IMG/VR virus record: IMGVR_UViG_3300023174_000040
Span: 248,001 to 312,000 of that record
Direction: 5' to 3' (one strand)
Length of the DNA stretch: 64,000 bases
Shown here: positions 11,510 to 55,278 of the stretch, piece after piece
Numbering within the stretch: position 1 is the first letter of the stretch
Layout: every line of letters starts with the position of its first letter
The notes under the pieces: generated by a model
The model's input: the letters and a program-made list of their open reading frames with translations, nothing else
Told to the model about the DNA's origin: nothing
The model's database searches: none
Translations under genes and position numbers: made by a program

Positions 11510-13849
11510 TTGAGTAAACCACCACCAAATATACTGTATCCTAGAAAATATGACTCAGATGAGACTCTTTTTTTAGTTTATAATACATCTGAATCTATAC
11601 TAATCAAGGACAATCCTCCTTGGTCAGAAACCATAGAAATAAAACCATCTCCTCAAGAGTTATGGGCTAACAATGGATTCGCAAACATAAACGGAGAATT
11701 GTTTTATTACAACTCAGTAGAATTAAATTTCAATCCAGAAGTAAATGTATCAAATATTTTACTGAATTCTTCTGGGGTGTTTGTTAAAGAAAATCACGGA
11801 TTGATAGATGGTTCTATAGTTAATTTTCAAACAGCAACTAGCTCGTTTTTAGTAGGCACAAATTATTATGTTGTAGAAGCGACTCAGAATAATTTTAAAC
11901 TTTCGATCAAAAAGAATGGGTCCGCACTGTCTCCCATAGGCTCATTAAACACCAGCGGAATCGTTCTGGTCGTGGGTAGAGTTTGCAAGTTTAAGGAATG
12001 TGTCAGGAACATGGGAGGAAAGCAAACTAAATTAAATTATGCAGGAGCAAAGGTCAGAGGATTTGTAGTGGCAGAACACCACAATCAAATTGTAGATGCA
12101 ATAATAAGTTTAGAAAACTTTATAGGTTATAATTTTACAGATAATCAATCCACTTTAGATTGGAAAATAAGAAATTTAAACTCATTGCCCACAATATTTG
12201 ATGATCATTCTTGCCCAAGCGTCAACTTTACGTTCGATATTATAGATAACAATTTAACCACAGGAATAACAGCTCAATATTCTATAACAATAGATAACAG
12301 TACGGCAAGTACCAATTTCAGATTAGACTTCGGAGATGGACAATACACCACAACGGAATATCAGGGAACACACACTTATTCAATCGGATCTAATTACGAT
12401 CCCACACTGAGTGTATTTAATAATAATTGCTCACTTACATTGACTCCTACTGAGAGATTAACTCCTCTAGAGCCGGTGAAGCAGACAATAACAGATGGCT
12501 TGGATATACCAGTGCCTCCTCCTCCGCAAATTCCTCCTATACTTATCACTCCATTTCAAGTTGTTCCAAACAAATATAACATACCTCCAATTGTTTTCCC
12601 GTGTTTAGATATAGCTCAGAATACCCCCGGCACCAGTATCCCCAGCAAAATAGAGATAGTACCTCCGCTGAAGGTTCCATCTTTAATAACCATAACACCA
12701 ATCAACATACCAGGAAAAATATCAATAACACCAATTAATATACCTGGAAAGGTAGAGATTGTTGTTCCTACTCCATTTAATATACCAAGTAAAATTGAAA
12801 TTAGCCCAATTAATATACCGGGAAGAATAAGCATAGATCCAGTTCAAGTGGACATAACATCGAGTGGAATACCAATACCAAGCACGATAACAATATCTCC
12901 TATTAATATACCAAGTCATATAACTGTAGATCCTATATCAATTGATATAAATACAGCCGGAGCGGCTATACCTAGTGTGATAAATATAAATCCAATAACT
13001 GTAAATGTAGATGTTCAGGACAGCATACCTTCAGTGATAACGGTAAATTCTCCGCTAATATATTTGCCTGATGTGGTTAACATTAATTACAACGGACCAA
13101 CTATACCAAGTTCTATAAATATTAATGGAACTTCTTTGCCACCCATAGAAATAGATCCAACTGGTTTGAACGGAGTCTATATTCCAGTGAGTTGGGGACC
13201 GGTGCCAGAACTAAACTGCACCGTTACTGTTCAATGTCCCACAAGTGGCGGCGGATATGGAATGGTAAAGCCAAATGGCCTAGACGGCATGGATGATAAC
13301 ACAATGGAAATTCAAGTCAGTGACATAGGGATACCGAGTGTCATTAATGTGGTTGCCCCTAAATTCCCAGACATAAAAATAGACGCATCAGAAATTCCAA
13401 GTTCAATAAAAGTTGAAAGAATAGAAGGAATATCGGAAATTAAGATTATTCCTCCTATAATGCCCATACCTTCTGAGATAAAGATAATAAGTGAGGCCAA
13501 GATCCCATCTAGCATCCTTTTGGATGCGTCGGAATTACCTAAATCAATTCCAATTGTCAATATGGATATTCCAGAAAGTATAGGATTAAAATTAATTGGG
13601 GACTTCCCGTCCGAAATTAAATTGAATGCGGAAGGAATACCTGATACCATTCAGGTCGTAGGAATACCTCCGGTAATAGAATTAAAGGGAACAATACCTG
13701 ATACTATTCAACTTGTAATGCCTGAGAAACCAGAAATAGAAATGGTTTATAAGGGTGCACCAATTGATGTTAAAATACAACTTGATATCAGCAAGGTAAC
13801 TGGCGAAGGTGATAAATTAAATTGCGTCAGCATAGTCCCCTGCAAGTGA
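11510..13849 (+). CDS. PKD-domain structural protein with long IPxxI-repeat C-terminal shaft
   Basis: LDFGDGQYTT...HTYSIGSNY PKD; about 20 IP-x-x-I-x-I repeats. Confidence 0.65.
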   Translation: MSKPPPNILYPRKYDSDETLFLVYNTSESILIKDNPPWSETIEIKPSPQELWANNGFANINGELFYYNSVELNFNPEVNVSNILLNSSGVFVKENHGLIDGSIVNFQTATSSFLVGTNYYVVEATQNNFKLSIKKNGSALSPIGSLNTSGIVLVVGRVCKFKECVRNMGGKQTKLNYAGAKVRGFVVAEHHNQIVDAIISLENFIGYNFTDNQSTLDWKIRNLNSLPTIFDDHSCPSVNFTFDIIDNNLTTGITAQYSITIDNSTASTNFRLDFGDGQYTTTEYQGTHTYSIGSNYDPTLSVFNNNCSLTLTPTERLTPLEPVKQTITDGLDIPVPPPPQIPPILITPFQVVPNKYNIPPIVFPCLDIAQNTPGTSIPSKIEIVPPLKVPSLITITPINIPGKISITPINIPGKVEIVVPTPFNIPSKIEISPINIPGRISIDPVQVDITSSGIPIPSTITISPINIPSHITVDPISIDINTAGAAIPSVININPITVNVDVQDSIPSVITVNSPLIYLPDVVNINYNGPTIPSSININGTSLPPIEIDPTGLNGVYIPVSWGPVPELNCTVTVQCPTSGGGYGMVKPNGLDGMDDNTMEIQVSDIGIPSVINVVAPKFPDIKIDASEIPSSIKVERIEGISEIKIIPPIMPIPSEIKIISEAKIPSSILLDASELPKSIPIVNMDIPESIGLKLIGDFPSEIKLNAEGIPDTIQVVGIPPVIELKGTIPDTIQLVMPEKPEIEMVYKGAPIDVKIQLDISKVTGEGDKLNCVSIVPCK

Positions 13850-13852
13850 AAT

Positions 13853-14695
13853 ATGCAAACTAGAACTAAAAAAATAAAAAACAACGAGTTTATAAAGACT
13901 CCAAGTTATAACTTTTGGGTTAGAAACTTTTGTAATTATTCTTGTCCTTACGTTGATATAAATTCCACGACATCTGAAAAAGAATACTTTCTTTTTCTTG
14001 AGAACGAATTCTACAATAATAAAAACAGATATTCATGGATAGATTCAGAAAATATCTATCACCCAACAGTAGCAATAGTATCGGACGGTTATGATTTTGA
14101 AAACTCTCATAAAGTCTTAGAAGATCAAAACGTATGCGTGCTTGCAGTAAATGGAACTCTAAAGAAATGGAAAAACAATAAATCTCCAAATTATTATGTT
14201 GTTAACAATCCATATGATGAATGTTTAAATTATTTGCCAAGAACAAATAGAACTCTCCCCAGATGCATAGCTTCAAGCAAGACTAATCATACTTTTTTAG
14301 AAAGATACAATGGAATAAAATATAAATACTATGCAGTAAATGAAGAGAGGGTAAACTATAGTGGATCAAAAGAAAATATGTATCAAATAGATGATTATAG
14401 AAATGTAATATGCGCTGCCATTAATCTTGCATATAGATTTCAGTGCAAGAAATTACTGTTGTTATCTTGTGATGATTCCTTTATTGAAAATAAGCCGGGT
14501 AGCGTTAAATTAGAAAGCGGCCTATATTCTTATCCTCAACAAAATTTAATATCAGAAATAATAGATTGCTGTCTTCACTGGTTAAAGGGTAAAATGGATA
14601 TAAAATATTATGGGCATTCTAAAAAATTAGATAATGCTGGATACATACAACTTAGTGACGTGAAAGAATTTATAACTGATGAAAACACCATTTGA
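13853..14695 (+). CDS. MptE/DUF115- or sialyltransferase-like fold protein
   Basis: VAIVSDG, VLAVNG, YYVVNNP, ICAAINLAYRFQCKKLLLLSCDDSF. Confidence 0.5.
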   Translation: MQTRTKKIKNNEFIKTPSYNFWVRNFCNYSCPYVDINSTTSEKEYFLFLENEFYNNKNRYSWIDSENIYHPTVAIVSDGYDFENSHKVLEDQNVCVLAVNGTLKKWKNNKSPNYYVVNNPYDECLNYLPRTNRTLPRCIASSKTNHTFLERYNGIKYKYYAVNEERVNYSGSKENMYQIDDYRNVICAAINLAYRFQCKKLLLLSCDDSFIENKPGSVKLESGLYSYPQQNLISEIIDCCLHWLKGKMDIKYYGHSKKLDNAGYIQLSDVKEFITDENTI

Positions 14696-14957
14696 CGACA
14701 ACTTTTCATTTTTGAATGAATTTAATAAGTGGATAAAACAGGACAAAGTTCCCTCTATGCCAAAGCTCCAAGAAAGAGTCTATCCAAAAAATACAAAAAA
14801 TCTTGGCACTAAAATAACAATAGACGAGGGAAATCACAAAGAAATAAAAAAAGATTTCATAAGAAGTGGCGGGACAGTCATAGGTAGTGAGGAAGATCTC
14901 CTGAGACTAGAGGTTAACGCAGGAACTTTTTACATAAACAAAAAATACGTTTATTGA
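14679..14957 (+). CDS. Hypothetical protein
   Basis: 92 aa ORF overlapping upstream stop. Confidence 0.5.
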   Translation: MKTPFDDNFSFLNEFNKWIKQDKVPSMPKLQERVYPKNTKNLGTKITIDEGNHKEIKKDFIRSGGTVIGSEEDLLRLEVNAGTFYINKKYVY

Positions 14958-15325
14958 ATCGTCCCCTTCTGGACCATGTTTTTTTGTTTTGGGAAATTGT
15001 TTATATTAACAACAACCTGAGGGGTTATAAGTATCATAGGGTTACCATTGACTGGGATATTGGAGTATCCTCTGGCTTTTAGATTTAGTTTTATTTCATC
15101 AAAAGTTTCGGCAGTCTGGACCCATGGTTCCCAATATATTTTGTTTTGTTCGATGGTATCGGCTATCTTGCCTTCCCAGCTTGGAGGAAGCCCAAGTATT
15201 TTAATACTAGACAAAGCAATTGGATTAATTTCTCTACATAATAATTTGGCTAGTATCTGTACACCTTTTTTATCTCTCTTTGCCAAATAAAGCCATAAAA
15301 TTTTAAGATCTTTTTGTTTGTTCAT
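14951..15325 (-). CDS. Hypothetical protein (start moved to MNKQKD)
   Basis: ATG at 15325 avoids overlap with the divergent gene. Confidence 0.55.
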   Translation of the reverse strand: MNKQKDLKILWLYLAKRDKKGVQILAKLLCREINPIALSSIKILGLPPSWEGKIADTIEQNKIYWEPWVQTAETFDEIKLNLKARGYSNIPVNGNPMILITPQVVVNINNFPKQKNMVQKGTIQ

Positions 15326-15359
15326 ATAATTTTTTATTTTATTAATATATATAACATAT

Positions 15360-15902
15360 ATGAGTAAATTCAAGGTAAAACTAAAGAACGCAGTCCAAGG
15401 ATTGCTAGATATATATAACGAAGACATAAGCATTCAAAGAAGTATTTATGTTACAGGCCCTCTTGGAAAGCACAGAGAATTAAAGGATGGTCAAATATTC
15501 ACAGATTCCAATTACTGGAAAAGATATGCTTATCCACAAGCCAAATTAGAAGATGCGTTCATAGAGGTGCTAGAGGATGACGGGTCTGTTTATGTTGATA
15601 AAACAAATAATAACGCCCCCAGAGTTTACATATTATCAGTAGAGGGAGATTTTGAAAACAATGTAGTAGACTTGGGTGTTAGTGAATTTGCCGAGTTCGT
15701 ACAAATATCAAACAGAGGGTCAGATACTGTCAGCGTTAGAATAAATTCATCGAATGATGCAATTTTTGGACTTTTAGGAAGTGAAACACAAGTCTTTAAT
15801 ACAGGTGATCTAAACATCCAAAAAATAGAATTTTCAAACGATAACCAAGAAACAGTCCCCGTTCAAGTAATAGCATCGGTGAATGTAGTATCAGGGAGTT
15901 AA
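15360..15902 (+). CDS. Hypothetical protein, beta-rich C-terminus
   Basis: 180 aa ORF preceded by TATATA element. Confidence 0.6.
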   Translation: MSKFKVKLKNAVQGLLDIYNEDISIQRSIYVTGPLGKHRELKDGQIFTDSNYWKRYAYPQAKLEDAFIEVLEDDGSVYVDKTNNNAPRVYILSVEGDFENNVVDLGVSEFAEFVQISNRGSDTVSVRINSSNDAIFGLLGSETQVFNTGDLNIQKIEFSNDNQETVPVQVIASVNVVSGS

Positions 15903-15904
15903 TA

Positions 15905-16135
15905 ATGCCTCAACTCATTAAACCAGGTGATGTAAAAATAATAACAAAGGATGGAGAGGTTAAAATATCTATCTCTTTGGATTTGAATATAAATATGGGA
16001 GAAATCTCTAGTGGGGTTGGAATATTAAAGAGTAATATTGAAGAAAAAATAAACAAAAAAGAAGAAGACAAAGTCCAGTGGGCAATCCCGGATTTTGCAC
16101 CAACAGAAAAAATTAACTTTGGAAAGGGTGGCTGA
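15905..16135 (+). CDS. Hypothetical protein
   Basis: 76 aa ORF, 2 nt after previous stop. Confidence 0.5.
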   Translation: MPQLIKPGDVKIITKDGEVKISISLDLNINMGEISSGVGILKSNIEEKINKKEEDKVQWAIPDFAPTEKINFGKGG

Positions 16136-16826
16136 TTCAGTGGTTGGGATATATGGAATTAAAAATAAAATAAACGGAAATATTTATATCGGACAAAGTA
16201 TAAAAATTGAAAGAAGATGGTCTAAACATAAAACGGAACTAAAGAAAAATAAACATCCAAACCAATACCTACTTAATTCATATAACAAATACGGAAAAGA
16301 TAATTTTGAGTTTTTAATATTAGAAGAATGCGAAAAAGAAAAATTAAATTCCATGGAAGAAAAATGGATCAATGTCTTCTCTAGGGAGAAAATATATAAT
16401 ATTAACTTAAATGTAATTGATCTTAATGGAGAGAAAAACCCATTTTTTGGTAAAAAACACAGTATAAAAACAAAGAAAAAAATGTCAATTTTGAAAAAAA
16501 ATAATTATAAAGGAGATCTTAATCCAAATTTTGGAAAAAAACAATCAAAAGAATCAAGATTGAAAATGACTCTAGGGAGAGCTAAAAGCGGTCTAACAAT
16601 AGAAAACGTTTTAGAAATAAAACAACTACTGCTATATGGTATAGAACATAAAGTAATAGCAGAAAAATTTAAAGTTGGACGAACAGTAATAACTAGAATA
16701 TCCAACGGTACTAGGTGGACGAATGTTACCGGTGGTCCAGTTGTACCTGTAGTTTATGACACTGATGGAAGAAGAAGAATTTCTGAGAACCATCGTAAAA
16801 ACAAAAAAAGAAAAAAGGAGAAATAA
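16128..16826 (+). mobile_element. Free-standing GIY-YIG homing endonuclease with NUMOD3 repeats and C-terminal HTH
   Basis: GIYGIKNKINGNIYIGQS...R..KH...L...H.N..L..SYNKYG; NPFFGKKHS and NPNFGKKQS; probable GTG start at 16128. Confidence 0.9.
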
Positions 16827-16827
16827 A

Positions 16828-17832
16828 ATGGGTATTGGCGCAGATGTTGGAACTTATAATTTAATCAATTGCAAAAGGGATGATGCAGGTAATTTTTCTT
16901 ACAAAAAAGAAGTGAATGCATTCATAGAACTCCCACTAGAGAACCGATTTGTTTTCAATATGATGAAACAAGCTGGTGTTCCGTTGATAGAGAGAGCCAA
17001 TGTAGCCTATGCACTTGGTGAGGCAGCGGTCAACATGGCCTATACCATGAACAGCCTCGAATTAAAAAGACCGATGGTGGCGGGGTGTGTTAATCCAAAG
17101 GAAAAAGATGCTTTTCAAATAATGAGTATTATGATTCATAGTCTAATAGGAGAGGTTTCACAAGATAAAGAATTACTTTATTACAGTGTTCCTGCGAACG
17201 CAATCAATGAAGAGACTGACGCCGATTATCACGGCAAAATCTTAGAAGCCATATTCAAGTCATATAGATCAGAGAAGGGCTTCTCAGTCGATCCTAGGCC
17301 CATTAATGAGGCATTGGCTATAATATATGCTGAACTGGCTCATAAATCATATACGGGCATAGCAGCATCTTTTGGCGGTGGTATGGTAAATGTTTGTTAT
17401 GCAATGTTTGGCAATCCAATATTTAGCTTCTCGATAGTGAATAGTGGTGACTGGATTGATAAGATGGCCGGGAAAGCCGTTGGTGAAAGTCCAACTTTTA
17501 TTAATAAAGAAAAAACAAAAATAGACTTAACAAAACCAGCCACTACTCTTGTTGAGAGAGCAATACAAACCCAGTACAGATTAATGATAGAACACACTGT
17601 AACTGAGATCAAAAAAGGTTTCGCTAATGTTCAGAAAAACGTAAGAACAGAAGACGAAGTAGACTTTGTCGTTGCCGGTGGAACTGCCACTCCAAACGGA
17701 TTCAAAGAAATGCTTGGAGAGTGCTTGAAACAAGCAGAAATACCAGTTAAAATAGGACAGATCATTAAACCAGAAGATAATTTATATTCTGTTGCGAAGG
17801 GTTGCTTGTTAGCGGCAGAAAACGCAAAATGA
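16828..17832 (+). CDS. Actin-fold ATPase (MreB/ParM/FtsA superfamily)
   Basis: ADVGT (phosphate 1), INEALA (connect 1), SFGGGMVN (phosphate 2), VAGGT (adenosine), VAKGCLLAA (connect 2); AGGAG RBS before ATG 16828. Confidence 0.85.
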   Translation: MGIGADVGTYNLINCKRDDAGNFSYKKEVNAFIELPLENRFVFNMMKQAGVPLIERANVAYALGEAAVNMAYTMNSLELKRPMVAGCVNPKEKDAFQIMSIMIHSLIGEVSQDKELLYYSVPANAINEETDADYHGKILEAIFKSYRSEKGFSVDPRPINEALAIIYAELAHKSYTGIAASFGGGMVNVCYAMFGNPIFSFSIVNSGDWIDKMAGKAVGESPTFINKEKTKIDLTKPATTLVERAIQTQYRLMIEHTVTEIKKGFANVQKNVRTEDEVDFVVAGGTATPNGFKEMLGECLKQAEIPVKIGQIIKPEDNLYSVAKGCLLAAENAK

Positions 17833-17939
17833 TTCATCCGCCATGTGTGGAAGGAAATCTTTCATCGTCCGCAAGGGCGATGATTGCATTTTTAGGCATA
17901 AAAAGCACAAAATAAATTTCTTTATAACTATATTATTAC

Positions 17940-18389
17940 ATGGAAAAAAATAAAAGTGTTAGCGACCTAGGCTCAGCAGCCTATATATTAATGCACAACT
18001 ATCGTGTTGTTGGGCGCAAAGGCAAAGAAATAATCTTCGAAGTAGAGAATGAAGAGAAATTCGACGAGCTTTGTTTGGATTATCTTTCTAGCGAATTCCA
18101 TAGATTTGATAGCTGCATAATGTCGCTCAAAAAGATAAAAGAATATAATTTTGATTCTAGAAATACCAGATTTGCAACAGATCTGGGTGTTGCTGCTTAT
18201 ATTCTAATGCACAAGTATAAAGTTCTTGGAAAACGTGGAAAATCAATATACTTTGAAGTAGAAAATGAAGAAGTCAATAGTAAATTTCAAGGTTTGGCCC
18301 TAGAGTATCTTTCTAGCGATTTCCACCGATTTGATAGTTGCCTCATGTCTTTAAAGAAAATCGGGGAATATATTTCCGAGTCTAATTAA
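17940..18389 (+). CDS. Tandem-duplicated small domain protein (DUF5659-like)
   Basis: Two near-identical halves: DLGxAAYILMHxYxVxGxxGKxIxFEVE...DYLSSxFHRFDSCxMSLKK. Confidence 0.65.
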   Translation: MEKNKSVSDLGSAAYILMHNYRVVGRKGKEIIFEVENEEKFDELCLDYLSSEFHRFDSCIMSLKKIKEYNFDSRNTRFATDLGVAAYILMHKYKVLGKRGKSIYFEVENEEVNSKFQGLALEYLSSDFHRFDSCLMSLKKIGEYISESN

Positions 18390-18402
18390 TATATAAGTTA
18401 TT

Positions 18403-19146
18403 ATGATAACTGATATTGAAAAGAAAAAATTAGAATTATCCCTTAAAATAGATGAACTAATAAAAGAACTCAAAAATAAATTCTTGACATCGGCATCGCC
18501 TGTAGCATCAGGCCCCGATGGAAAGATGGGTGTATGGGACCACGTTAAGAATTGGTGGAATAAATTTAGATATGGTAAATTTGGCAACCTAGCCCAGGTT
18601 GAACAGGACCCAGAGGCAAAAAAAGACACAGCAAAGGCTGGGGATGAGCCAAAATCAGAGTGTTATCAATTTTCTTTTCAAGAATATAGAGCTATTAAAG
18701 ATAGTTGTGATATCTTAGAGACAATTATAGAAAAAAATCAAGATAGTCTAAATGAGGAAGAGTCGGAAAATCTCAAGAATCTAAGATTATTCAGAATAAT
18801 AGATGATTGGGGAAAGAAATTTAAACAAGTAATATTAGATTTGGTTTATTCTGCTGAGTCGACTCCGGTAGCTCCGGTTGAGGGAGAAGGTGTTAGAAAA
18901 TCTGAGCCTACGGTGGGCCCATCGGATCCAAAAGAAAAAGAAAAGTCAACAGCATTGGCCCCAGAAGTTAAGCCCAAGGAGAAAAAGCAAAGAAAACCAA
19001 GAGTAAAGAAGTCTAAGGTAAAAGAAAAAGCAGACACTGCGGACTCAACCACAGAAGAAAAAGTTGACTCTCCCGAGGCAGTTAAAAAAGCACTAGCTAA
19101 ATTAAAATCAGAAAATCCAGATCTTGATTTTGATTGGCGTTCGTAG
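18403..19146 (+). CDS. Hypothetical protein with charged, disordered C-terminus
   Basis: 247 aa ORF preceded by TATATA. Confidence 0.55.
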   Translation: MITDIEKKKLELSLKIDELIKELKNKFLTSASPVASGPDGKMGVWDHVKNWWNKFRYGKFGNLAQVEQDPEAKKDTAKAGDEPKSECYQFSFQEYRAIKDSCDILETIIEKNQDSLNEEESENLKNLRLFRIIDDWGKKFKQVILDLVYSAESTPVAPVEGEGVRKSEPTVGPSDPKEKEKSTALAPEVKPKEKKQRKPRVKKSKVKEKADTADSTTEEKVDSPEAVKKALAKLKSENPDLDFDWRS

Positions 19147-19155
19147 CCGGTCTAA

Positions 19156-19527
19156 TTACCCCTGTGGCTTTAAAAGCATATTTAAATTATTAATATCTAT
19201 ATTATCTCCGTTGTTGAAGACTATGTTTTTATCAACTGGCTTTTCAGATTTATTATTATTGAATTCACTTATTATTTCCTGATGCTCAGGATTATCTGGG
19301 TCTAGTTGCTGCTCTTCGCAGATCCCAACAATATTACTAAAAAAGAAAAAGTTTTTACAACCTGTTATTGGGTGCAAGGTTTCTATTCCATCAATATGAA
19401 CCGATTGACATATGCCAGTAAAATAATCATTGAATTGATTTTCTGTAAACTTCCTTCCTATATGAACAGTGAATACAGTTATTGGCTTACCTATAAAATA
19501 CCTAAATTTTTCCAAGTCCATAATCAA
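19156..19527 (-). CDS. Hypothetical protein, possibly Sm-like fold
   Basis: 123 aa ORF in operon with primase. Confidence 0.5.
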   Translation of the reverse strand: MIMDLEKFRYFIGKPITVFTVHIGRKFTENQFNDYFTGICQSVHIDGIETLHPITGCKNFFFFSNIVGICEEQQLDPDNPEHQEIISEFNNNKSEKPVDKNIVFNNGDNIDINNLNMLLKPQG

Positions 19528-19532
19528 TTCCT

Positions 19533-20591
19533 TTATATTGTTTTGATCTTAAAATAGTCTCCGCCCGTCCCGAATGGTGCCTGGAAATCTAAATTTTTCC
19601 TAGAGGCCAAAATATAATTTTTAAGTATCCTTGGCCCCTCTTTAACATACATTTCATTCCAGTCTTTATACAGCTTATGCGGGCTGACAAACATCAGTCT
19701 TTGGTCGGATCCATTTGTTTGCATATTCTGGCTAGCCATCATACTCATTGATGTACTGCCCTGGAGACCCGCTTTATCATTATCTAAGCAGATTACAATT
19801 TTATAGTCTTTTATCAAAGACATTTGTTTTTCGCTAAGGTTTTTTCCACCACATGCAATTGAGTTTAACCCAGAGTGGAAAATACTCAAAGCATCAAACT
19901 CTCCCTCACACACATAGACGAAATTATCTTTATCGGGCCAACTTCCACCGGCCATAAATAAAACATCACCTTTACCAATACCTATACTCTTATCTGGCCC
20001 CAGGTATCTGAGGCTAGACTTACCAATATGTCTAGCATTAAAATAGAATAAGTCTCCATCTCTATCATAGTAAGGAATAACTATTCTAGCTTTATATGGT
20101 GCGGTTCTGCAGATGTATAGGCCATCAGGGGGTATCTTTCTTTTCTCTAGATACTCAACGGCTAAATTTCTCCAAAAATTATTTTTTGGCAAACTATTTA
20201 TTAAGCTACTTCCCTCTGGGAGGGATATTGTCTTTTTTTCTTGAACTTTACTAGGAGATTCCTTGTCATCATCCAAATTATCAAAGAAGTCGTAAAGTTT
20301 ATCCTCCAGCTCTCTTATACTGCTTCTGCCATTTAATGTGAGATAAGCATCTTCATAAGAACACTTATCTACTATCTTTATTAATTTTACCAGGCTCCCC
20401 TTCTTATCGGTTTTGAAACAATGGAATACCCCATTCTTTCTTTTAGTTTTACCGCCAGAGGGAGAGCACCACAAATGGTGCTTTGAATCTTCTGCGAAAA
20501 CAGAATTAACTCTGATCTCAGATCCGTGAACAACTATATCGCCCAGTGCTTTTTCAGCCCACTTCTTAAAGTTATCAAAAATATCACTCAT
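19533..20591 (-). CDS. DNA primase (Zn-binding plus Toprim; T4 gp61/DnaG-like)
   Basis: HLWC...FHCFK; VCEGEFDALS; ICLDNDKAG; KDWNEM. Confidence 0.88.
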   Translation of the reverse strand: MSDIFDNFKKWAEKALGDIVVHGSEIRVNSVFAEDSKHHLWCSPSGGKTKRKNGVFHCFKTDKKGSLVKLIKIVDKCSYEDAYLTLNGRSSIRELEDKLYDFFDNLDDDKESPSKVQEKKTISLPEGSSLINSLPKNNFWRNLAVEYLEKRKIPPDGLYICRTAPYKARIVIPYYDRDGDLFYFNARHIGKSSLRYLGPDKSIGIGKGDVLFMAGGSWPDKDNFVYVCEGEFDALSIFHSGLNSIACGGKNLSEKQMSLIKDYKIVICLDNDKAGLQGSTSMSMMASQNMQTNGSDQRLMFVSPHKLYKDWNEMYVKEGPRILKNYILASRKNLDFQAPFGTGGDYFKIKTI

Positions 20592-20616
20592 GTTTAGACT
20601 ATACTATAATATATTT

Positions 20617-21372
20617 ATGAAAATACAACACATATCAGTTAGCAGAAAACAACTTTGGGATCAATGCGAACAAGCATACAAATATAAATACCACCTTGAA
20701 ATCAAGTCACCCGAACCAGAACCAGAGTACTTTTTATACGGAAAACTTGTCCATAAGATAGCAGAAGAATACGTGAAAAACAAGGGAGAAGTGGAGATAG
20801 AGAGTTTTTTACACCCATATTTAAAGGGAGAATTGCTCCTTGAAAATAAGAAAGTAGAACTAACAAAAGATTATAAAAATAAATTAAAAGAACATCTAGC
20901 AAATATTAAAAAATTAAATGACAGAATTGGATTCGATGGAGAAACAGAATACTTTTTTAAGTATGATCTCGAGCCACCAAAAGAAAAATTTGTCACAGGT
21001 GTCATAGACCGAATCTTAATAAAAGATGAAAAATGTTTTATTATAGATTATAAAACAACAAAAAAAGGATTTTGGAGAAAGAATTCAGACACCATAAGAA
21101 AAGACATCCAGCTTCTTTGTTACGCTAGGGTGGTTCAAAAGAATTTTGGAATAAAACCAGAAAATATAAGGGCGGCCCTTTATTATTTGGATGGAGGAGA
21201 TATAGTTCCAACTAAATTCAATGAAAACATGCTAATAAATGCAGAAAGTTTATTGTTGGATACTTACAACAATATAGTGGAGAAAGACCCAGAATTAGTA
21301 AGAGGAAGAGTTGGAAATCATTGCAATAGATGCGACTTTAGAAAAATGTGCACTTGGTATAGATCAAGCTAA
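20617..21372 (+). CDS. PD-(D/E)XK RecB/Cas4-like exonuclease
   Basis: DQCEQAY, GKLVH, GVIDRI, IIDYKT, QLLCYA, CNRCDFRKMC. Confidence 0.85.
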   Translation: MKIQHISVSRKQLWDQCEQAYKYKYHLEIKSPEPEPEYFLYGKLVHKIAEEYVKNKGEVEIESFLHPYLKGELLLENKKVELTKDYKNKLKEHLANIKKLNDRIGFDGETEYFFKYDLEPPKEKFVTGVIDRILIKDEKCFIIDYKTTKKGFWRKNSDTIRKDIQLLCYARVVQKNFGIKPENIRAALYYLDGGDIVPTKFNENMLINAESLLLDTYNNIVEKDPELVRGRVGNHCNRCDFRKMCTWYRSS

Positions 21373-44508: not shown

Positions 44509-44874
44509 ATGTATCAAATTAAATGTCCTGACTGTGGCGAGGAAAGAACTGTGAAGGCTAAAAAGAAATGGATGAAGAATGAGCCTCCATTTTTAAAGAT
44601 ATGTAAAAGTTGTTGCCAGATAGGTAAAGAAAAAACTCCAGAGTGTCGTGCAAAACTTTCTGAGGCTGTAAAAGCCATTCAAACAGAAGATGTCATTAAT
44701 AAAAAGAGTCAATTTATGAGAGATCATCCTGAAATCTGGGAGAATAATCTTATTTTTGGATACTCAGCAGGATGGAATAAAGGCCTAAAGATGCCGAAAT
44801 CATCAGAAGACAAAAAACAAAAAATATCAGAGTCGATGAAAAACACACTCGAAGAGAAAAAGAAAAACAAATGA
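44509..44874 (+). CDS. Zn-ribbon/NUMOD3-like DNA-binding protein
   Basis: CPDC, CKSC, GWNKG...KQKISESMK. Confidence 0.65.
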   Translation: MYQIKCPDCGEERTVKAKKKWMKNEPPFLKICKSCCQIGKEKTPECRAKLSEAVKAIQTEDVINKKSQFMRDHPEIWENNLIFGYSAGWNKGLKMPKSSEDKKQKISESMKNTLEEKKKNK

Positions 44875-46004
44875 ATATCGAAGAATTTGAAATTAAATAC
44901 GGAGAATATGGCTTTAGAGACAAAATCTCTATATTTTGCAGCACTGAAGGCTGTGAAAATCATATGTTAACAAATAAAGACTCGGCTGTCAGAAATATAA
45001 AAAAGCATGGAACATTCAAGTGCAGAACTTGTTGTTACACAGAGGACGGAAAAAAAAGAATATCAGAGTCTACATCTTATAAACGTTCGCCAGAAACATG
45101 CAGAAAAATGGCAGAAGCAAAAATAGCTTTTTATCTTACCGAGGAAGGAAAGAAACTTAAGAAGAAACTCTCTGTGCTGACGGCGGAAAACCATTCAGTA
45201 CATAAATATGATAAGTCCAAAAGAAGAGGAGTGTTTGAATCTAAAAAAACGGGCAGGAAACTTTCCTATGATTCTTCATATGAGCTCAGGCTTTGCTGGC
45301 TCTTGGACTCCGATGAGACAGTATTAGATTTTGAAACTCAACTAGGATTTCAAATAAACGGAAGAGGTAGATGTTTAGATTGTCTCGTGACTTACAAAAG
45401 TGGTAGGAAAAAAGTAATTGAAATGAAGCCTAAACAAAGAATAGATGAGTTTAAAAATCAAATAGAAGATACCAAAGAATATGCTAATCAAAATAATTGG
45501 GACTTTCAATTAATGACAGAAGACGATTTAGGAATGAACTATAAGCAGATTAGATTATGGGCAGATGATTATAGAACAGAGAATACCGGAATTGATTATC
45601 ATGAATATAGAAAAGAAAATAATAGAAAAAAAGCCAAAAAACACTATCACGAAAAAATAGCTTTAGATAAAGTTAATGTTTATTGTGAATATTGTAAAGA
45701 AAATCATTCTGTTTTAAAGAAAAGCCATGATAGTAATATAAAAAGAAACGGAAAATACATCTGCGAAAAAGAAGGTGGGCACATATCAGGAAGTAAGCCT
45801 AAACCACATTTGATTAAAGAAAATCCTTATGCAAAGGAAGGCAAAAAGCAATGTAAAAAGTGCAACGAAATTAAATTTTTTGAACTTTTTAATAAAGATA
45901 AGTCGAGAAGAGATGGATATAGAGAGTATTGCAAAGATTGCGAATCAATTAAACAAAAAGAAAAGTATAAGAAATCTAGGTCAGAGAAACCTACCGCTGA
46001 TTAA
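44871..46004 (+). mobile_element. TnsA-N-type PD-(D/E)XK endonuclease with Zn fingers; probable free-standing homing endonuclease
   Basis: YDSSYE, DCLVTY, VIEMKPK, W.FQLMTEDDL; C-terminal CKKC...CKDC. Confidence 0.75.
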
Positions 46005-47108: not shown

Positions 47109-47179
47109 GCGGGATTGACATAACGGCCGTGTGCAAGCCTTCCAAGCTTGAAAAACGAGTTCGACTCTCGTATCCCGCT
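47109..47179 (+). tRNA. trnG: tRNA-Gly(TCC), CCA not encoded
   Basis: Acceptor GCGGGAT/ATCCCGC, D arm ACAT/GTGT, anticodon arm CAAGC-CTTCCAA-GCTTG, T arm ACGAG-TTCGACT-CTCGT. Confidence 0.93.
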
Positions 47180-52205: not shown

Positions 52206-54983
52206 ATGGCAACTCTTTATTATAACAACGCCGTTGGAAACGAAGACTGGTCGACGCTGGGAAACTGGTGGCTTGATGATTCTTTCTCTACCCCCGCAAC
52301 CCAGCTTCCAACAAGCAGTGATGATGTGGAGATATACGAATCGCTGACAAGTAATTCAGGAAGCGTGCCCACTGTCAACAATCTGACAAACAACTCGGAA
52401 AACTATAAAGGTCTTCAAACGTCGGTGATTGTTCTTGGAACTGCGACCTTCAATGGTCATAGCTTTGGTGGGTATGTCGCTGGCCTTCTCCCCACCATAA
52501 CCGGGAATGCAGTCTTCAACGATTATTCTATGGCAAGCGATTTTCGTATTCATGGAAAAGTCACATTCAATGACTATTCAGTCGCAGAAGCAAACTTAAA
52601 TGATGGAGACGACTGGGATCTAGAGGTCGTATTCAATGATTATAGCAGAAAAACGGCGGCTATCCACTCGTCGGGCGTTGTCACATTCAATGATTATAGT
52701 CGTAATATTAATGGAACTATTAATGGTGGTTTGATTATATTCAATGATAACTCAACCAATGCACAAGATTTAACAGCAGAACAATCAACAGTAAATGCGA
52801 TTTTCAACGACTATTCGTATAACACGGGAACAATATCAGAAAACACAGTTTTCAATGATTATTCAAAAAATTATGATGGAGTGATATACGTAGACTCAAA
52901 TAGTGGAGATAATAATAACGACATATCCACACCACAAAGTCCATATAACACAATTCAAAAAGGATTTGTGACTGCGTATCACTTGGTTCCAAAATTAACA
53001 ACCGTAGACGGGGTAAAATGTGCTAGTTTCAATGGATCAACAGATTACTTAAATGTTCTTCCTGTGCAAGGAGCAAACATACAGGAAACTTTTACTGTGG
53101 AATTTTGGTTCTATATGAAAAGCGAAACAAGTGGAATCTACACCCTTCTGAGCAACTTGTTTAATCAAGGATCTAATTCACAAACTCATCCATTATGGAA
53201 GGTAAATATCTGCACAAGGACTTATTTGGGCTTTGCAGACGCTCCCGGCGGCAATGTAATTTCTGTTTCTGGGAAGGTCGTCGCTTCGGATCCCTCAGTT
53301 GTAGGAAATACCTTCTCCAACATAGAGTTAAATGAATGGACTCATTTTGCAATGGTTGCAGATGGAGGAGTGTTTAAGATATACTTAAATGGAAATTTAG
53401 AATCAACACATAATTTTACTGGGGGCTATTCTTTTGGAATTGATGAGGGTGATGATCTTAGAAGCGGATTAGATATAGGCTACGATTATGATAATGGCGA
53501 TTTTTTTGACGGATACATAAGCGGAATAAGAATATTCAACGACGCCGCAGTCTACACAAGTACGTTCACGCCCAGTTCCCCGGATGATTTTGGATCCACG
53601 GTAGGATTACACACAGCCAGCTTTCTGTGGAATTTTGACACTCCCAAGAATTATCTGATAGATGTTAAGGCCTTGGATCCCCAAGACGATGTCTGGAGCG
53701 CAGACGCTGGACCAGGCAGAAATCACGGGGAAGCCACAGAGTGGCCAAACAATATAGCGTTAAGAGGCAATAATACCAACGCAGATGGATCACCATGGAA
53801 AGAAGTAATAATATCAGAAGAAGATCTTCAATATGCCACCGAAGCGGCAGGCGCAAATTTGCTCTCGGATGGATTCACAACAGATGGAACTTCGAATGGA
53901 AAAATTAATTTTATTGGAGCAACCAATCTAGAAAATAAATTTTTACTTAACAATTCGAATACATTCTCAAATAATAGTTTGCAAGGAGTTTACATTGTAG
54001 AGTGGGCCGAAGGGAGCACATCCAAAAAAAGTCGGGCGTATTTGAGTTTTACATCGGGGCCAAATAATATAAGCGTGCGTCCTACAAATGACCAATACGG
54101 CATCATTAACTTGGCAGGGACATGGAAACTGCCGGCCAAATTTAAACCGGCTTCATCCATGGGCAATATAAATTTCAGTGGACGGGACGCAGTGTGGGAT
54201 TACGCCGAAGATGTGGCAATAACAACATCAACCAATGGAAGAAAAATAGACATACTAACGTACGGAGAAGTTATCATAGGCGATATTTCTTCCAACGGGG
54301 GCGGGAGGGACGGAGGCGCAGGCCCGGGGAGTGGCGGAGAAGTAAGGATCAACAACGTGATGGCGGACAACATCAACGTCAACGGAGGGGACGGAGCTAA
54401 CTTCGACCCATTCTTTTTGACACAAGGAGGCGGGGGAAATTTCACAGGAATAAATTCAAACGTCAAGGACATACATTTGAATCCCGGAACAGGGGGCTAT
54501 GCACAAGATGGAGGAGACATAATCCTCATAGGATCCAAGGCCAAAAACATCTATTCGCACGGAGGACTGAGCGCCGACTGCGGCGGCGGCGGAAGTGGCG
54601 GCGACCTTTTCATGCTGAACAGCACGGTGGGTGAGGTAGCATGCTACGGCTACCCAGGCGACGGGTGCGGGTCGGGTGGAAGTAATGGAGGATACGCAAC
54701 AATAATAAACAGCACGGTGGATTGGCTAAGACTAAACGGAGCGAGCGACGGCACTTCTTACGGGCAAGGCGGAAATGCGGTGGTCATAGACAGCAGCATC
54801 ATGCTTGCGGACGTAACCAACTTCGGGCTTCCAAGTGAAATGTGTAATGACATATATGGCCACCCATGTGAATCTGAGCAAATTCCGGGCTATGTCGTGG
54901 CTCCCAACCATGATTACGACGGCTCAATAAAGACACACACGACAAAGAAGCAGGCAATAAACGGACCAGGATTCCTCGGATAA
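52206..54983 (+). CDS. Fibre/receptor-binding-like protein: FNDYS beta-helix repeats, LamG-like domain, Gly-rich C-terminus
   Basis: About 7 (V/A)xFNDxS repeats; FTVEFWF...EWTHFAMV...IYLNG...GYISGIRI. Confidence 0.65.
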   Translation: MATLYYNNAVGNEDWSTLGNWWLDDSFSTPATQLPTSSDDVEIYESLTSNSGSVPTVNNLTNNSENYKGLQTSVIVLGTATFNGHSFGGYVAGLLPTITGNAVFNDYSMASDFRIHGKVTFNDYSVAEANLNDGDDWDLEVVFNDYSRKTAAIHSSGVVTFNDYSRNINGTINGGLIIFNDNSTNAQDLTAEQSTVNAIFNDYSYNTGTISENTVFNDYSKNYDGVIYVDSNSGDNNNDISTPQSPYNTIQKGFVTAYHLVPKLTTVDGVKCASFNGSTDYLNVLPVQGANIQETFTVEFWFYMKSETSGIYTLLSNLFNQGSNSQTHPLWKVNICTRTYLGFADAPGGNVISVSGKVVASDPSVVGNTFSNIELNEWTHFAMVADGGVFKIYLNGNLESTHNFTGGYSFGIDEGDDLRSGLDIGYDYDNGDFFDGYISGIRIFNDAAVYTSTFTPSSPDDFGSTVGLHTASFLWNFDTPKNYLIDVKALDPQDDVWSADAGPGRNHGEATEWPNNIALRGNNTNADGSPWKEVIISEEDLQYATEAAGANLLSDGFTTDGTSNGKINFIGATNLENKFLLNNSNTFSNNSLQGVYIVEWAEGSTSKKSRAYLSFTSGPNNISVRPTNDQYGIINLAGTWKLPAKFKPASSMGNINFSGRDAVWDYAEDVAITTSTNGRKIDILTYGEVIIGDISSNGGGRDGGAGPGSGGEVRINNVMADNINVNGGDGANFDPFFLTQGGGGNFTGINSNVKDIHLNPGTGGYAQDGGDIILIGSKAKNIYSHGGLSADCGGGGSGGDLFMLNSTVGEVACYGYPGDGCGSGGSNGGYATIINSTVDWLRLNGASDGTSYGQGGNAVVIDSSIMLADVTNFGLPSEMCNDIYGHPCESEQIPGYVVAPNHDYDGSIKTHTTKKQAINGPGFLG

Positions 54984-54995
54984 AAAGGACAAAAC

Positions 54996-55268
54996 ATGAT
55001 CAAATTCGACCCGCCACTAGAAGTGCAAGTAAAAGGAAAGAAAATAAATGTGAGCGAGCTGCCCCTTGTGGTAATTGACATTCAAAAAACCAAAGTATGC
55101 AAGGCGCAATCCTCCCGTTTCTACAAGACATTGACCTTGTGGGAAGGGGCGTCTTACGACGCCATAGGAAACTACACACAGGAGCAAGCGGAGGCCAGAT
55201 ACCTAGAACTGCTCGGTAGCAAACCAGCAAAAGAACTCGCAAAACTATACGTAGAACCAACCAAATAA
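54996..55268 (+). CDS. Small protein, possible fibre chaperone (paralog of 59255)
   Basis: LWEGASYDAIGNYTQEQAEARYLELLG. Confidence 0.55.
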   Translation: MIKFDPPLEVQVKGKKINVSELPLVVIDIQKTKVCKAQSSRFYKTLTLWEGASYDAIGNYTQEQAEARYLELLGSKPAKELAKLYVEPTK

Positions 55269-55278
55269 AGTAAAAAAA

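What the first reader, a model, noticed from the sequence alone, without database searches (positions are those of the whole stretch)
16828..18389. Phage actin-fold ATPase followed by a tandem small-domain protein: possible cytomotive or segregation module
Seen: all five actin-superfamily motifs in a ~334 aa protein lacking the Hsp70 substrate domain; the next gene has two near-identical ~65 aa domains. Known: type II partition uses ParM plus a small DNA-binding ParR; large phages usually use tubulin (PhuZ), and phage actins are less commonly reported. Inference: an actin-based DNA or capsid positioning system, or a host shape/division modulator, in a T4-like jumbo phage. No centromere repeat was seen.
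Basis: partly seen in the sequence, partly recalled or inferred. Interest (0 to 1): 0.65.

Follow-up and report, generated by a model that had tools for sequence, protein, structure and literature searches.

The report
Huge-phage volactin-type actin with DUF5659 partner
A roughly half-megabase freshwater phage carries an actin-like filament protein of the archaeal "volactin" family, followed by a small two-domain partner gene; the pair stays together across hundreds of uncultured huge phages, which suggests an actin-based way of organising infection that has not been studied.

Summary
Window 16828-17832 (+) encodes a 334-aa complete actin fold. It matches Pfam Volactin PF25216 over its full length (E 5e-62). 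Its AlphaFold model is closest to filament-forming actins: MamK Z 28, BeeR 27, MreB 25. Window 17940-18389 (+) encodes 149 aa made of two ~70-aa repeats that are 70% identical. I identify these repeats as divergent DUF5659 domains (hhalign probability 99.7%).

The pair is strongly syntenic. In about 90 related loci, every actin gene with enough downstream DNA is followed on the same strand by a DUF5659-type gene. Three far more distant lineages (actins 34-38% identical) keep the same order with abutting or overlapping genes, next to replication genes. Actin and partner are the slowest-evolving genes in the block.

The related huge-phage genomes checked have no tubulin and no tyrosine integrase. 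No centromere repeats lie nearby, and the partner is neither a ribbon-helix-helix protein nor basic.

My best reading is a lytic-cycle actin filament plus adaptor or regulator, analogous to AlpC/AlpA, ParM/ParR or PhuZ. It is not a member of ParMRC. Polymerisation, binding and cargo remain untested: co-folding gave no verdict. I class it as a new variant of a known kind.

The parts
15360..15902 (+). Conserved 180-aa gene at the upstream edge of the block; function unknown, acidic (pI 4.5)
   Evidence: A homologue lies upstream of the actin in 83 of 93 loci. No Pfam, PHROG or NCBIfam family.
15905..16135 (+). Conserved 76-aa gene that directly precedes the actin gene in relatives; function unknown
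   Evidence: Present in 87 of 93 loci at a median offset of -270 nt from the actin start. Absent from the distant lineages L017, L104 and L106. No family match.
16095..16826 (+). GIY-YIG/NUMOD3 homing endonuclease inserted between the 76-aa gene and the actin gene; not part of the module
   Evidence: Pfam GIY-YIG E 1.1e-11 and NUMOD3 E 1.2e-12; PHROG homing endonuclease E 4e-25. A homologue sits at this site in only 6 of 93 loci.
16828..17832 (+). Volactin-family actin homologue, 334 aa (P0001)
   Evidence: PF25216 E 5e-62, 210.7 bits against a cut-off of 35, residues 1-330 on profile 1-321. AF2 pLDDT 88. MamK Z 28.3, BeeR 26.7, MreB about 25, crenactin 24.8, actin about 24. 32-34.5% identical over its full length to haloarchaeal homologues. 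Forms one clade with them, support 97/93, excluding MreB, ParM and FtsA.
17862..17883 (+). Terminator-like hairpin (9-bp stem, GCAA loop, T-rich tail) in the 107-nt spacer between the two genes
   Evidence: Consensus scan only. Most relatives have spacers of 0-60 nt or overlapping genes, so this may be an attenuator specific to this sublineage.
17940..18389 (+). Tandem DUF5659-type protein, 149 aa (P0002): domain 1 about residues 1-74, domain 2 about residues 75-149
   Evidence: The halves are 70% identical. Single-domain AF2 model pLDDT 91, topology beta-alpha-beta-beta-alpha-alpha. hhalign against a set in which 16 of 26 members hit PF18903: probability 99.7%, E 5e-26. ESM Atlas structural match to a DUF5659 cluster: TM 0.71, rmsd 1.8 over 64 residues. 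Lies downstream of the actin in every locus with at least about 1 kb of downstream DNA except L002/LR745208.
18403..19146 (+). Variable 247-aa gene after the partner, with a lysine-, glutamate- and proline-rich low-complexity tail; possible further component, function unknown
   Evidence: The positional counterpart is 382-635 aa in relatives. A homologue is detectable in only 40 of 93 loci, at 27% median identity. No family match.
19156..19527 (-). Conserved 123-aa gene on the opposite strand; function unknown
   Evidence: Homologue in 56 of 93 loci; seen in L001 and L005-L007.
19533..20591 (-). DNA primase (Toprim); start of the replication genes that flank the module
   Evidence: Pfam Toprim_2 E 2.3e-14. 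Conserved neighbour in 51 of 93 loci.
20590..21372 (+). PD-(D/E)XK nuclease, a replication or recombination gene
   Evidence: Pfam PDDEXK_1 E 2.8e-22. Conserved neighbour in 47 of 93 loci.

Best explanation
This is a two-gene cytoskeletal cassette of a freshwater huge phage with a T4-type capsid and terminase (record 323 kb, estimated about 0.5 Mb when complete). The first gene encodes a Volactin-family actin. [quoted passage not shown] The second gene encodes two fused DUF5659 domains. I infer that this is a covalent pseudo-dimer of what other phages encode as a single-domain protein that would homodimerise, and that it binds the filament as an adaptor or as a regulator of assembly (nucleator, capper or stabiliser). 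Together they would position or move a phage cargo during lytic infection. The most likely cargo is replicating phage DNA or the replication/assembly site. This would do, with actin, what PhuZ tubulin does in nucleus-forming jumbo phages and what AlpC/AlpA does for the CGP3 prophage. Shown here: the fold, the family, the motifs, the domain identity of the partner, and the conservation and spread of the gene pair. Inferred: polymerisation, actin-partner binding, the cargo, and the timing.
For: Actin identity:
- PF25216 matches over the full length.
- The model is closest to filament-forming actins, not to Hsp70 or sugar kinases.
- The nucleotide motifs are invariant, including E161, which I take from general knowledge of the family (not an alignment made here) to be the catalytic Glu of connect-1.
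- The family-specific S-F-G-x-G-M and GGDWID motifs are shared with haloarchaeal homologues, whose founding member polymerises dynamically in vivo (PMC10869688).

Gene pairing:
- In 93 actin loci, the DUF5659 gene lies downstream on the same strand in all with enough downstream DNA except LR745208.
- Three diverged lineages, with actins 34-38% identical to P0001, keep actin then tandem DUF5659 with abutting or overlapping genes.
- The DUF5659-type gene occurs once per genome, next to the actin.
- Actin and partner are the most conserved genes in the block: 70-71% median identity against 27-56% for the neighbours.
- Domain 2 of the tandem proteins forms a single clade (support 100) and domain 1 nearly one (2 changes), which fits a single duplication followed by a fixed asymmetric pseudo-dimer.

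Context:
- The pair travels with replication genes: primase, PD-(D/E)XK nuclease, Pol III alpha, GyrB, 5'-3' exonuclease.
- No tubulin in G000, in the complete 533-kb relative G001, or in LR756511 and LR745208.
- No tyrosine integrase in G000, G001 or LR756511.
- The family is large and almost entirely viral: 1813 clusters, contigs up to 673 kb, and Atlas clusters 92-100% viral.
- It occurs in lake metagenomes from about 11 studies.
Against: - No direct evidence of polymerisation or of actin-partner binding. The co-folding job scored 0.01 and gave no verdict.
- The partner has no detectable DNA-binding fold (best Z 4.9).
- The partner is near-neutral: pI 6.1, subfamily median 6.06, against 8.85 for canonical DUF5659.
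- No repeat array lies beside the genes.
- LR745208 has the actin without any DUF5659 gene in its genome, so the actin can work without this partner.
- One distant tandem DUF5659 gene (L105) has no actin within 3 kb.
- The phosphate-2 Asp is replaced by Ser across the family, and the effect on ATPase activity is unknown.
- Timing of expression is unknown, because no RNA runs hold the sequence.
Confidence: 0.5

Rival explanations
1. It is a true type II (ParMRC-like) partition system that keeps the phage genome as a low-copy plasmid prophage. The DUF5659 protein would bind a centromere and the actin would push sister genomes apart.
For: The gene order, motor then small partner, matches parM-parR (R100 parM/parR layout). 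The pair is tightly co-inherited. Lack of an integrase is compatible with a plasmid prophage. An intergenic array of about 14 copies of a 36-nt repeat exists elsewhere in the genome (G000 about 112190-112850) and could in principle be a centromere.
Against: No repeats lie next to the operon here, and in relatives the operon is flanked by tightly packed genes. The partner is not ribbon-helix-helix and not basic. The actin is not in the ParM family; it is separated from ParM by a very long branch and matches it less well in structure (TM 0.51-0.54 against about 0.7 for MreB and MamK). These are 0.5-0.67 Mb phages with T4-type structural genes. I found no lysogeny marker, though only the tyrosine integrase was searched for.
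Confidence: 0.1
2. The filament serves virion assembly rather than DNA positioning. It would move or gather procapsids or other virion parts, with the DUF5659 protein linking the filament to a structural protein.
For: The one informative context found for a canonical DUF5659 gene is inside the head-to-tail structural module of a contig of about 31 kb, between the prohead protease and large head-region genes on one side and tail completion and sheath genes on the other (L014). In the window the module lies between tail-fibre-like genes (PKD, YHYH) and replication genes. In LR745208 the actin sits among what look like structural genes, judged from the ORF list only. PhuZ filaments are known to deliver capsids in nucleus-forming phages (general knowledge; review PMC7950403).
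Against: Only one canonical DUF5659 context was informative; the others were short contigs. In the three distant lineages the pair is embedded in replication genes, not structural genes.
Confidence: 0.15
3. The actin reshapes the host rather than the phage factory. It would alter cell shape, size or division to make room for a very large burst or virion, echoing volactin's role in haloarchaeal shape change. The partner would tune or anchor the filaments.
For: The characterised family member, volactin, is a cell-shape factor whose filaments span the cytoplasm and touch the membrane with their tips (PMC10869688). The best structural matches include MreB. The partner is non-basic, which fits a protein-protein rather than a protein-DNA role.
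Against: There is no predicted membrane-targeting element and no link to envelope genes, apart from an optional GT9 glycosyltransferase in relatives. The persistent linkage to replication genes is not explained. Salactin, another haloarchaeal actin, acts in DNA partitioning (PMC10869688), so the function of one member does not predict the function of another.
Confidence: 0.15
4. The protein is a non-polymerising ASKHA ATPase (chaperone-like or kinase-like) and the downstream gene is merely a neighbour.
For: The phosphate-2 Asp is replaced by Ser. Co-folding gave no support.
Against: The same Ser is found in the haloarchaeal homologues, and volactin, the founding member of the family, forms dynamic filaments. 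The top structural matches are all filament formers over the full length. Conservation of the pair across 34-38% actin identity, with overlapping genes, is hard to explain by chance adjacency.
Confidence: 0.05

Closest known systems
Volactin (VolA, HVO_2015) of Haloferax volcanii; Pfam PF25216
   Same: Same Pfam family, matched over the full length and far above the cut-off. 32-34.5% identity to haloarchaeal homologues, with shared family-specific motifs. One clade in the tree. Volactin forms dynamic filaments.
   Different: Here it is encoded by freshwater huge phages rather than haloarchaea. The haloarchaeal loci have no DUF5659 neighbour; they share a conserved upstream gene of about 300 aa instead. 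Volactin's known role is the rod-to-disk shape change, and nothing shows that role here.
AlpC/AlpA of the Corynebacterium glutamicum prophage CGP3
   Same: A phage-encoded actin is co-transcribed with a small adaptor, and both are needed for efficient viral DNA replication (PMC4446434). This is the nearest functional precedent for a phage actin cassette linked to replication.
   Different: In CGP3 the adaptor gene comes first in the operon, and alpS repeats lie in the promoter region. Here the partner follows the actin and no repeats are nearby. CGP3 is an integrated prophage; this is a huge phage with no tyrosine integrase found. The sequence relationship to AlpC and AlpA was not tested because I had no sequences.
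ParM/ParR/parC (type II plasmid partition, R1/R100)
   Same: An actin-fold motor gene is followed by a small partner gene. Dynamic filaments push or position DNA (general knowledge).
   Different: The actin family differs. The partner's fold differs: it is not ribbon-helix-helix. There is no adjacent centromere. The replicon is a phage, not a plasmid.
PhuZ tubulin spindle of nucleus-forming jumbo phages
   Same: A huge phage encodes its own cytomotive filament, presumably to organise replication and assembly (review PMC7950403).
   Different: That system uses the tubulin fold. No tubulin is found in this phage or in three relatives. The shell protein (chimallin) was not searched for.
MamK, BeeR and MreB (bacterial actins)
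   Same: These are the best structural matches: Z 28.3, 26.7 and about 25 over about 285-300 residues.
   Different: Only 14-20% sequence identity. No Pfam MreB_Mbl hit for P0001. The NCBIfam MamK match is 21.9 bits against a cut-off of 400. There is no link to magnetosome or envelope genes.
DUF5659 (Pfam PF18903)
   Same: The partner's domain is homologous by profile-profile comparison (probability 99.7%) and by predicted structure (TM 0.71).
   Different: P0002 itself scores below detection against the Pfam model. The actin-linked subfamily is much more conserved, is often duplicated in tandem, and is near-neutral rather than basic. No function has been published for DUF5659.

Membership tests
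Actin/ASKHA cytomotive actins | Five conserved nucleotide-binding motifs: phosphate 1, connect 1, phosphate 2, adenosine, connect 2 | tested here: met
   All five are present and invariant across homologues. Phosphate 2 has Ser in place of the usual Asp, as in the whole Volactin family.
Actin/ASKHA cytomotive actins | The actin fold across the whole protein, resembling filament-forming members | tested here: met
   AF2 pLDDT 88, pTM 0.87. MamK Z 28.3, BeeR 26.7, MreB about 25, crenactin 24.8, actin about 24, each aligned across residues 1-334.
Actin/ASKHA cytomotive actins | Nucleotide-dependent polymerisation into filaments | not testable with these tools
   Needs biochemistry or imaging.
Volactin (PF25216) | Score above Pfam's gathering threshold over the full-length model | tested here: met
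   210.7 bits against a cut-off of 35; profile positions 1-321 of 321. Among the 14 control genomes only Haloferax volcanii passes the cut-off.
Volactin (PF25216) | Groups with haloarchaeal volactin homologues, apart from MreB, ParM and FtsA | tested here: met
   Clade support 97/93 on a long stem. 32-34.5% identity over 99% of the length. Shared S-F-G-x-G-M-x-N and GGDWID motifs. HVO_2015 itself was not available; megaplasmid homologues were used.
Volactin (PF25216) | Role in cell-shape transition | not testable with these tools
   Known only for H. volcanii.
ParMRC type II partition | Motor belongs to the ParM family | tested here: not met
   Pfam returned only Volactin, plus a sub-threshold BcrAD_BadFG hit. 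ParM lies outside the clade on a very long branch. Foldseek TM to ParM is 0.51-0.54.
ParMRC type II partition | Adaptor is a ribbon-helix-helix DNA-binding dimer (ParR) | tested here: not met
   The model's topology is beta-alpha-beta-beta-alpha-alpha. No ribbon-helix-helix or other DNA-binding fold appears among the matches (best Z 4.9). pI 6.1.
ParMRC type II partition | Centromere repeats (parC) next to the operon | tested here: not met
   No arrays in window 13000-21000 other than the intragenic duplication.
ParMRC type II partition | Gene order: motor, then adaptor, in one operon | tested here: met
   Same strand, with gaps of 0-100 nt or overlaps in most loci; overlapping or abutting genes in L017, L104 and L106.
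DUF5659 (PF18903) | Direct match to the Pfam model above threshold | tested here: not met
   No hit for P0002 or for either half, even at E up to 10.
DUF5659 (PF18903) | Homology by profile and by structure to proteins that do match the model | tested here: met
   A profile search of 1.84 billion representatives links the family to proteins of which 16 of 26 hit PF18903. hhalign probability 99.7%, E 5e-26. Atlas TM 0.71, rmsd 1.8 Å over 64 residues, to a cluster in which 92% of members carry PF18903.
PhuZ/TubZ tubulin phage cytoskeleton | Tubulin/FtsZ GTPase domain encoded by the phage | tested here: not met
   PF00091 is absent from G000, G001 (100% complete), LR745208 and LR756511; the controls were positive.
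AlpAC (CGP3) | Sequence homology to AlpC and AlpA; alpS repeats upstream | not tested
   No AlpC or AlpA sequence was available through the tools. No upstream repeats are seen here. The comparison rests on PMC4446434.

The most novel reading that the evidence does not exclude
A large, globally distributed group of freshwater huge phages (0.5-0.67 Mb) organises infection with its own actin cytoskeleton instead of the tubulin/PhuZ system. The filament comes from the otherwise haloarchaeal Volactin family. It works with a previously uncharacterised filament-binding partner family (DUF5659), which would be a new class of actin adaptor or regulator unrelated to ParR, AlfB or AlpA.
Probability: 0.35. 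Interest if true: 0.8.

Novelty: new variant of a known kind. Interest (0 to 1): 0.62.

Why it matters
Phage cell biology is dominated by one model: the PhuZ tubulin spindle plus the chimallin nucleus. Phage actins are known from a single studied prophage system, AlpC/AlpA.

Here an actin gene is among the most conserved genes of a very large clade of uncultured huge phages. There are more than 1800 protein clusters at about 70% identity, on contigs up to 673 kb. The gene is always coupled to a small protein of unknown function.

If the pair forms a filament-adaptor machine, three things would follow:
- It would be a second, independent cytoskeletal solution for organising very large phage genomes.
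- It would give DUF5659 its first function.
- It would provide a tractable two-protein system, 334 aa plus 149 aa, for studying Volactin-family filaments outside halophiles.

The kinship between haloarchaeal and phage members also raises a question about cross-domain gene flow.

Tried and rejected
- **Co-folding of P0001 with P0002** (own alignments A6 and A5): score 0.01 and 0.00, verdict 'no answer'. This is not evidence either way.
- **Sequence search of P0001 against PDB chains:** only spurious short matches to K2P potassium channels and no actin, so structure prediction was needed.
- **Fold searches with the DUF5659 domain model:** PDB by Foldseek, no match at E <= 0.001; PDB by VIA-align wide, best Z 4.9 with KH- or ferredoxin-like noise; BFVD, only weak rows with a few DUF5659 entries. 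I assign no known fold or function.
- **PHROGs:** nothing for P0001, for canonical DUF5659 members, or for the 76-aa and 247-aa neighbours. There was only a weak phrog_25671 hit (unknown function) for P0002.
- **NCBIfam:** only a far sub-threshold MamK hit.
- **Local centromere search:** direct, inverted and tandem repeats gave nothing beyond the gene duplication.
- **Cellular relatives in species-representative genomes:** six hits, all in MAG bins of six unrelated phyla and syntenic with the phage block. One lies on a 546-kb contig. I read these as mis-binned phage contigs, so they give no host inference.
- **The genome search 'relatives':** not available for a virus record.
- **Contexts of canonical DUF5659 genes:** three of four were on contigs under 2 kb and uninformative. 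tblastn of one against GenBank phages found nothing.
- **Record behind L105:** not held, so I could not check whether that phage has an actin elsewhere.
- **Rooting inside the Volactin clade:** rejected as unreliable. The outgroup branches are 6-10 substitutions per site.
- **Read laying:** not used. All holders are DNA contigs with no RNA, so it could not show expression.
Full report
**Setting.** The window is G000:C1:248001-312000 of a 323-kb IMG/VR virus record that CheckV rates 64% complete. That suggests a genome of about 0.5 Mb. The window encodes a Gp23-type major capsid protein (E 1.5e-89), a T4-type large terminase, PKD-, YHYH- and Laminin_G-bearing fibre-like giants, a Toprim primase and a PD-(D/E)XK nuclease. 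GC content is about 35%. The 1.56-kb stretch of the finding occurs in lake and other freshwater metagenomes from about 11 studies besides the likely source. No RNA run holds it. 'T4-like huge phage' is therefore a fair description.

**The observation.** The ORF at 16828-17832 (+) gives 334 aa (P0001). The longer ORF from 16756 overlaps the upstream gene, and homologues begin at the position of 16828. The ORF at 17940-18389 (+) gives 149 aa (P0002). Its two halves are 70% identical over 66 residues (E 5e-33). The actin motifs are present and invariant in homologues: D6-x-G8-T9, N160-E161, S181-F-G-G-G-M186, G284-G285-T-x-x-P-x-G291-F292, and V322-A-x-G325. No repeat array lies within 13-21 kb of the window apart from the internal duplication of the second gene.

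**What the first gene is.** Pfam gives one significant family: Volactin PF25216, E 5e-62, 210.7 bits against a cut-off of 35, over the whole protein and the whole model. Neither MreB_Mbl nor a ParM family is returned. NCBIfam gives only a MamK hit of 21.9 bits against a cut-off of 400. PHROGs gives nothing. A plain sequence search of PDB finds no actin.

An AlphaFold model built on 24 homologues has pLDDT 88 and pTM 0.87. It aligns over its whole length to filament-forming actins: MamK Z 28.3, BeeR 26.7, MreB about 25, crenactin 24.8, eukaryotic actin about 24. ParM matches less well, with TM 0.51-0.54.

tblastn against plasmids finds only haloarchaeal megaplasmid genes, at 32-34.5% identity over 99% of the query. 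These share the unusual phosphate-2 motif S-F-G-x-G-M-x-N and the GGDWID motif. The Ser in place of the canonical Asp is therefore a family trait, not a lesion.

A maximum-likelihood tree puts all phage and haloarchaeal sequences in one clade (support 97/93) on a long stem away from E. coli MreB, E. coli FtsA and R100 ParM. The root inside that clade cannot be trusted. Volactin itself forms dynamic filaments in H. volcanii and affects the rod-to-disk transition (PMC10869688).

**What the second gene is.** P0002 has no Pfam hit, even at E up to 10. A word-based search with one half found 136 small proteins of about 76-80 aa at 55-78% identity, with a sharply conserved core. A single-domain AlphaFold model has pLDDT 91 and topology beta-alpha-beta-beta-alpha-alpha.

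A profile search of 1.84 billion representatives found only 109 proteins, both single-domain and tandem. The distant ones hit Pfam DUF5659 (PF18903): 16 of 26, several above the cut-off. Profile-profile comparison of the two sets gives probability 99.7%, E 5e-26. The ESM Atlas structural search gives TM 0.71 (rmsd 1.8 Å over 64 residues) to a cluster in which 92% of members carry PF18903.

P0002 is therefore a tandem of divergent DUF5659 domains. No paper in the library mentions DUF5659. PDB fold searches give nothing above Z 4.9, so I assign no DNA-binding or other known fold. The protein is near-neutral (pI 6.1). The actin-linked subfamily has a median pI of 6.06, whereas canonical DUF5659 proteins are basic, with a median of 8.85.

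A tree of individual domains shows that domain 2 of the tandem proteins forms one clade (support 100). Domain 1 forms nearly one clade (2 changes), and the single-domain forms group apart (support 98). This fits one ancient duplication. I infer a fixed, asymmetric pseudo-dimer of what is elsewhere a homodimer.

**Is the pair real?** P0001 has 1813 cluster-level homologues. The top 120 are all 69-95% identical, all carry PF25216, and sit on contigs up to 673 kb. Atlas clusters of these proteins are 92-100% viral.

I analysed 93 actin-bearing loci with a script: 80 from IMG/VR and the rest from ENA/JGI, GenBank and MAG bins. Every actin gene with at least about 1 kb of downstream DNA is followed on the same strand by a DUF5659-type ORF, with one exception. 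The ORF follows either directly or after one inserted gene (0.8-1.06 kb). The exception is LR745208. L001 (LR756511), L010 and L081 carry a single-domain form.

The conserved block is: 180-aa gene, optional GT9 glycosyltransferase, 76-aa gene, actin, DUF5659, variable low-complexity protein, 123-aa gene on the minus strand, primase, PD-(D/E)XK nuclease. Actin and partner are its most conserved members, at 70-71% median identity against 27-56% for the others.

The decisive point is that three much more distant tandem DUF5659 proteins each lie directly after a Volactin gene. These are P0304, P0279 and P0313, with E 4e-10 to 2e-6 against my profile. Their Volactin genes encode 366-376 aa, only 34-38% identical to P0001, and the two genes abut or overlap. 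The neighbours there are different but are again replication-type genes: GyrB, Pol III alpha, 5'-3' exonuclease.

Three results run the other way. One tandem gene (L105) has no actin within 3 kb. One canonical single DUF5659 gene sits in the head-tail module of a contig of about 31 kb, with no actin nearby. The haloarchaeal volactin loci have no DUF5659 gene; they share a different upstream neighbour of about 300 aa.

Within whole genomes, there is one Volactin gene each in G000, G001 (533 kb, 100% complete), LR745208 and LR756511. The DUF5659-type gene occurs only next to the actin in three of the four, and LR745208 has none.

**How it most likely works.** These points are shown:
- The first gene encodes a complete actin fold of a family whose founding member polymerises.
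- The second gene encodes a partner that is co-inherited with the actin and probably co-transcribed with it.
- The pair is linked to replication genes.
- There is no phage tubulin.
- There is no tyrosine integrase.
- There is no adjacent centromere.

From this I infer that the actin forms dynamic filaments during lytic infection. I infer that the DUF5659 pseudo-dimer binds them as an adaptor or assembly regulator. I infer that the system positions replicating phage DNA or the replication/assembly site. The nearest precedent is AlpC/AlpA of prophage CGP3, where an actin and its co-transcribed adaptor are needed for efficient viral DNA replication (PMC4446434). The nearest functional analogue in huge phages is PhuZ.

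The co-folding test gave no verdict and is not used as evidence. A terminator-like hairpin at 17862-17883 in the 107-nt spacer might set the actin-to-partner ratio in this sublineage. Relatives mostly have short spacers or overlapping genes.

**Rivals.**
- A true ParMRC-like plasmid-prophage partition system. Against it: the partner is not ribbon-helix-helix and not basic, there is no adjacent centromere, and the actin is not of the ParM family.
- A capsid or virion trafficking role. This is suggested by the structural-module context of one canonical DUF5659 gene.
- A host shape or division modulator, by analogy with volactin.
- A non-polymerising ATPase. This is unlikely given the fold matches and the family.

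**Comparison and novelty.** Membership in Volactin/PF25216 is met by score, coverage, motifs and tree. Membership in ParMRC fails on three defining features: motor family, ribbon-helix-helix adaptor, and adjacent centromere. Only gene order matches. Functionally the cassette resembles ParM/ParR, AlfA/AlfB or AlpC/AlpA, but the partner family is different.

I found no paper describing phage Volactin-family actins or any function for DUF5659. Databases already label the phage proteins automatically as 'Volactin domain-containing'. I therefore rate it as a new variant of a known kind: an actin plus small-partner cassette with a new partner family, in a new host class (huge lytic-type phages).

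**Limits.** The host is unknown. The MAG bins carrying these contigs span six phyla and look like mis-binned phage DNA. HVO_2015 itself could not be fetched, so megaplasmid homologues stood in for it.

Noticed in passing
window 16095-16826 (+): A GIY-YIG/NUMOD3 homing endonuclease gene is wedged between the conserved 76-aa gene (it overlaps that gene's 3' end) and the actin start codon; it ends 2 nt before the ATG. A homologue sits at the same site in only 6 of 93 related loci. This looks like a mobile insertion next to a highly conserved target gene.
   Followed up: partly
outside the window: G000:C1 about 112190-112850, plus two copies at 109773-109809: An intergenic array of about 14 same-strand direct repeats with a 36-nt period. 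The unit is roughly GATTTTAACAAGGTAGTTGAGTGAACCA plus 8-10 variable nt. The spacers are too short for CRISPR. It could be an iteron, origin, centromere or promoter array. It lies about 152 kb from the actin module, and no link was shown.
   Followed up: partly
L002 / LR745208.1 337426-338391: This 485-kb high-GC huge phage has a Volactin-family actin that groups with the haloarchaeal sequences (support 100/99). The gene sits among what look like structural genes, judged from the ORF list only. The whole genome has no DUF5659-type gene. It may represent a different use of the actin.
   Followed up: partly
L099 2800-3699 and L100 2926-3834 (haloarchaeal megaplasmids): The haloarchaeal volactin homologues are each preceded by a hypothetical gene of about 300 aa. 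The two are 36% identical over 300 residues (E 1e-45). This may be a conserved partner of cellular volactins.
   Followed up: partly
window 54000-58600: GC content rises to 0.49-0.52 against about 0.35 elsewhere, within the 1094-aa Laminin_G_3 protein gene (55279-58563), and many long antisense ORFs appear there. This may be a compositionally foreign or repeat-rich fibre gene.
   Followed up: no
window 44871-46004 (+): A 377-aa protein with a TnsA-like endonuclease N-terminal domain (E 6e-7) lies about 0.5 kb downstream of the Gp23-type capsid gene, after a 121-aa ORF. It may be another mobile endonuclease.
   Followed up: no
window 13853-14695 (+): A 280-aa protein has a sub-threshold MptE-like (6-hydroxymethylpterin diphosphokinase-like) match: E 4e-6, 27.1 bits against a cut-off of 34.6. 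It is conserved at the upstream end of the block in 67 of 93 loci.
   Followed up: no
window 47109-47179 (+): tRNA-Gly (anticodon TCC), the only tRNA in the window.
   Followed up: no
G001 = IMGVR_UViG_3300049215_000771 (L047): A 532.7-kb relative rated 100% complete is classed by IMG/VR as a 'provirus', yet no tyrosine integrase was found and only a weak ParB_N match. The label may be an artefact.
   Followed up: partly
L008-L013 (genome contigs): Contigs carrying this actin block are binned into MAGs of Acidobacteriota, Actinomycetota, Bdellovibrionota, Pseudomonadota, Bacteroidota and Verrucomicrobiota. One of them is a 546-kb contig. These are probably huge-phage contigs mis-binned into bacterial MAGs.
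   Followed up: partly
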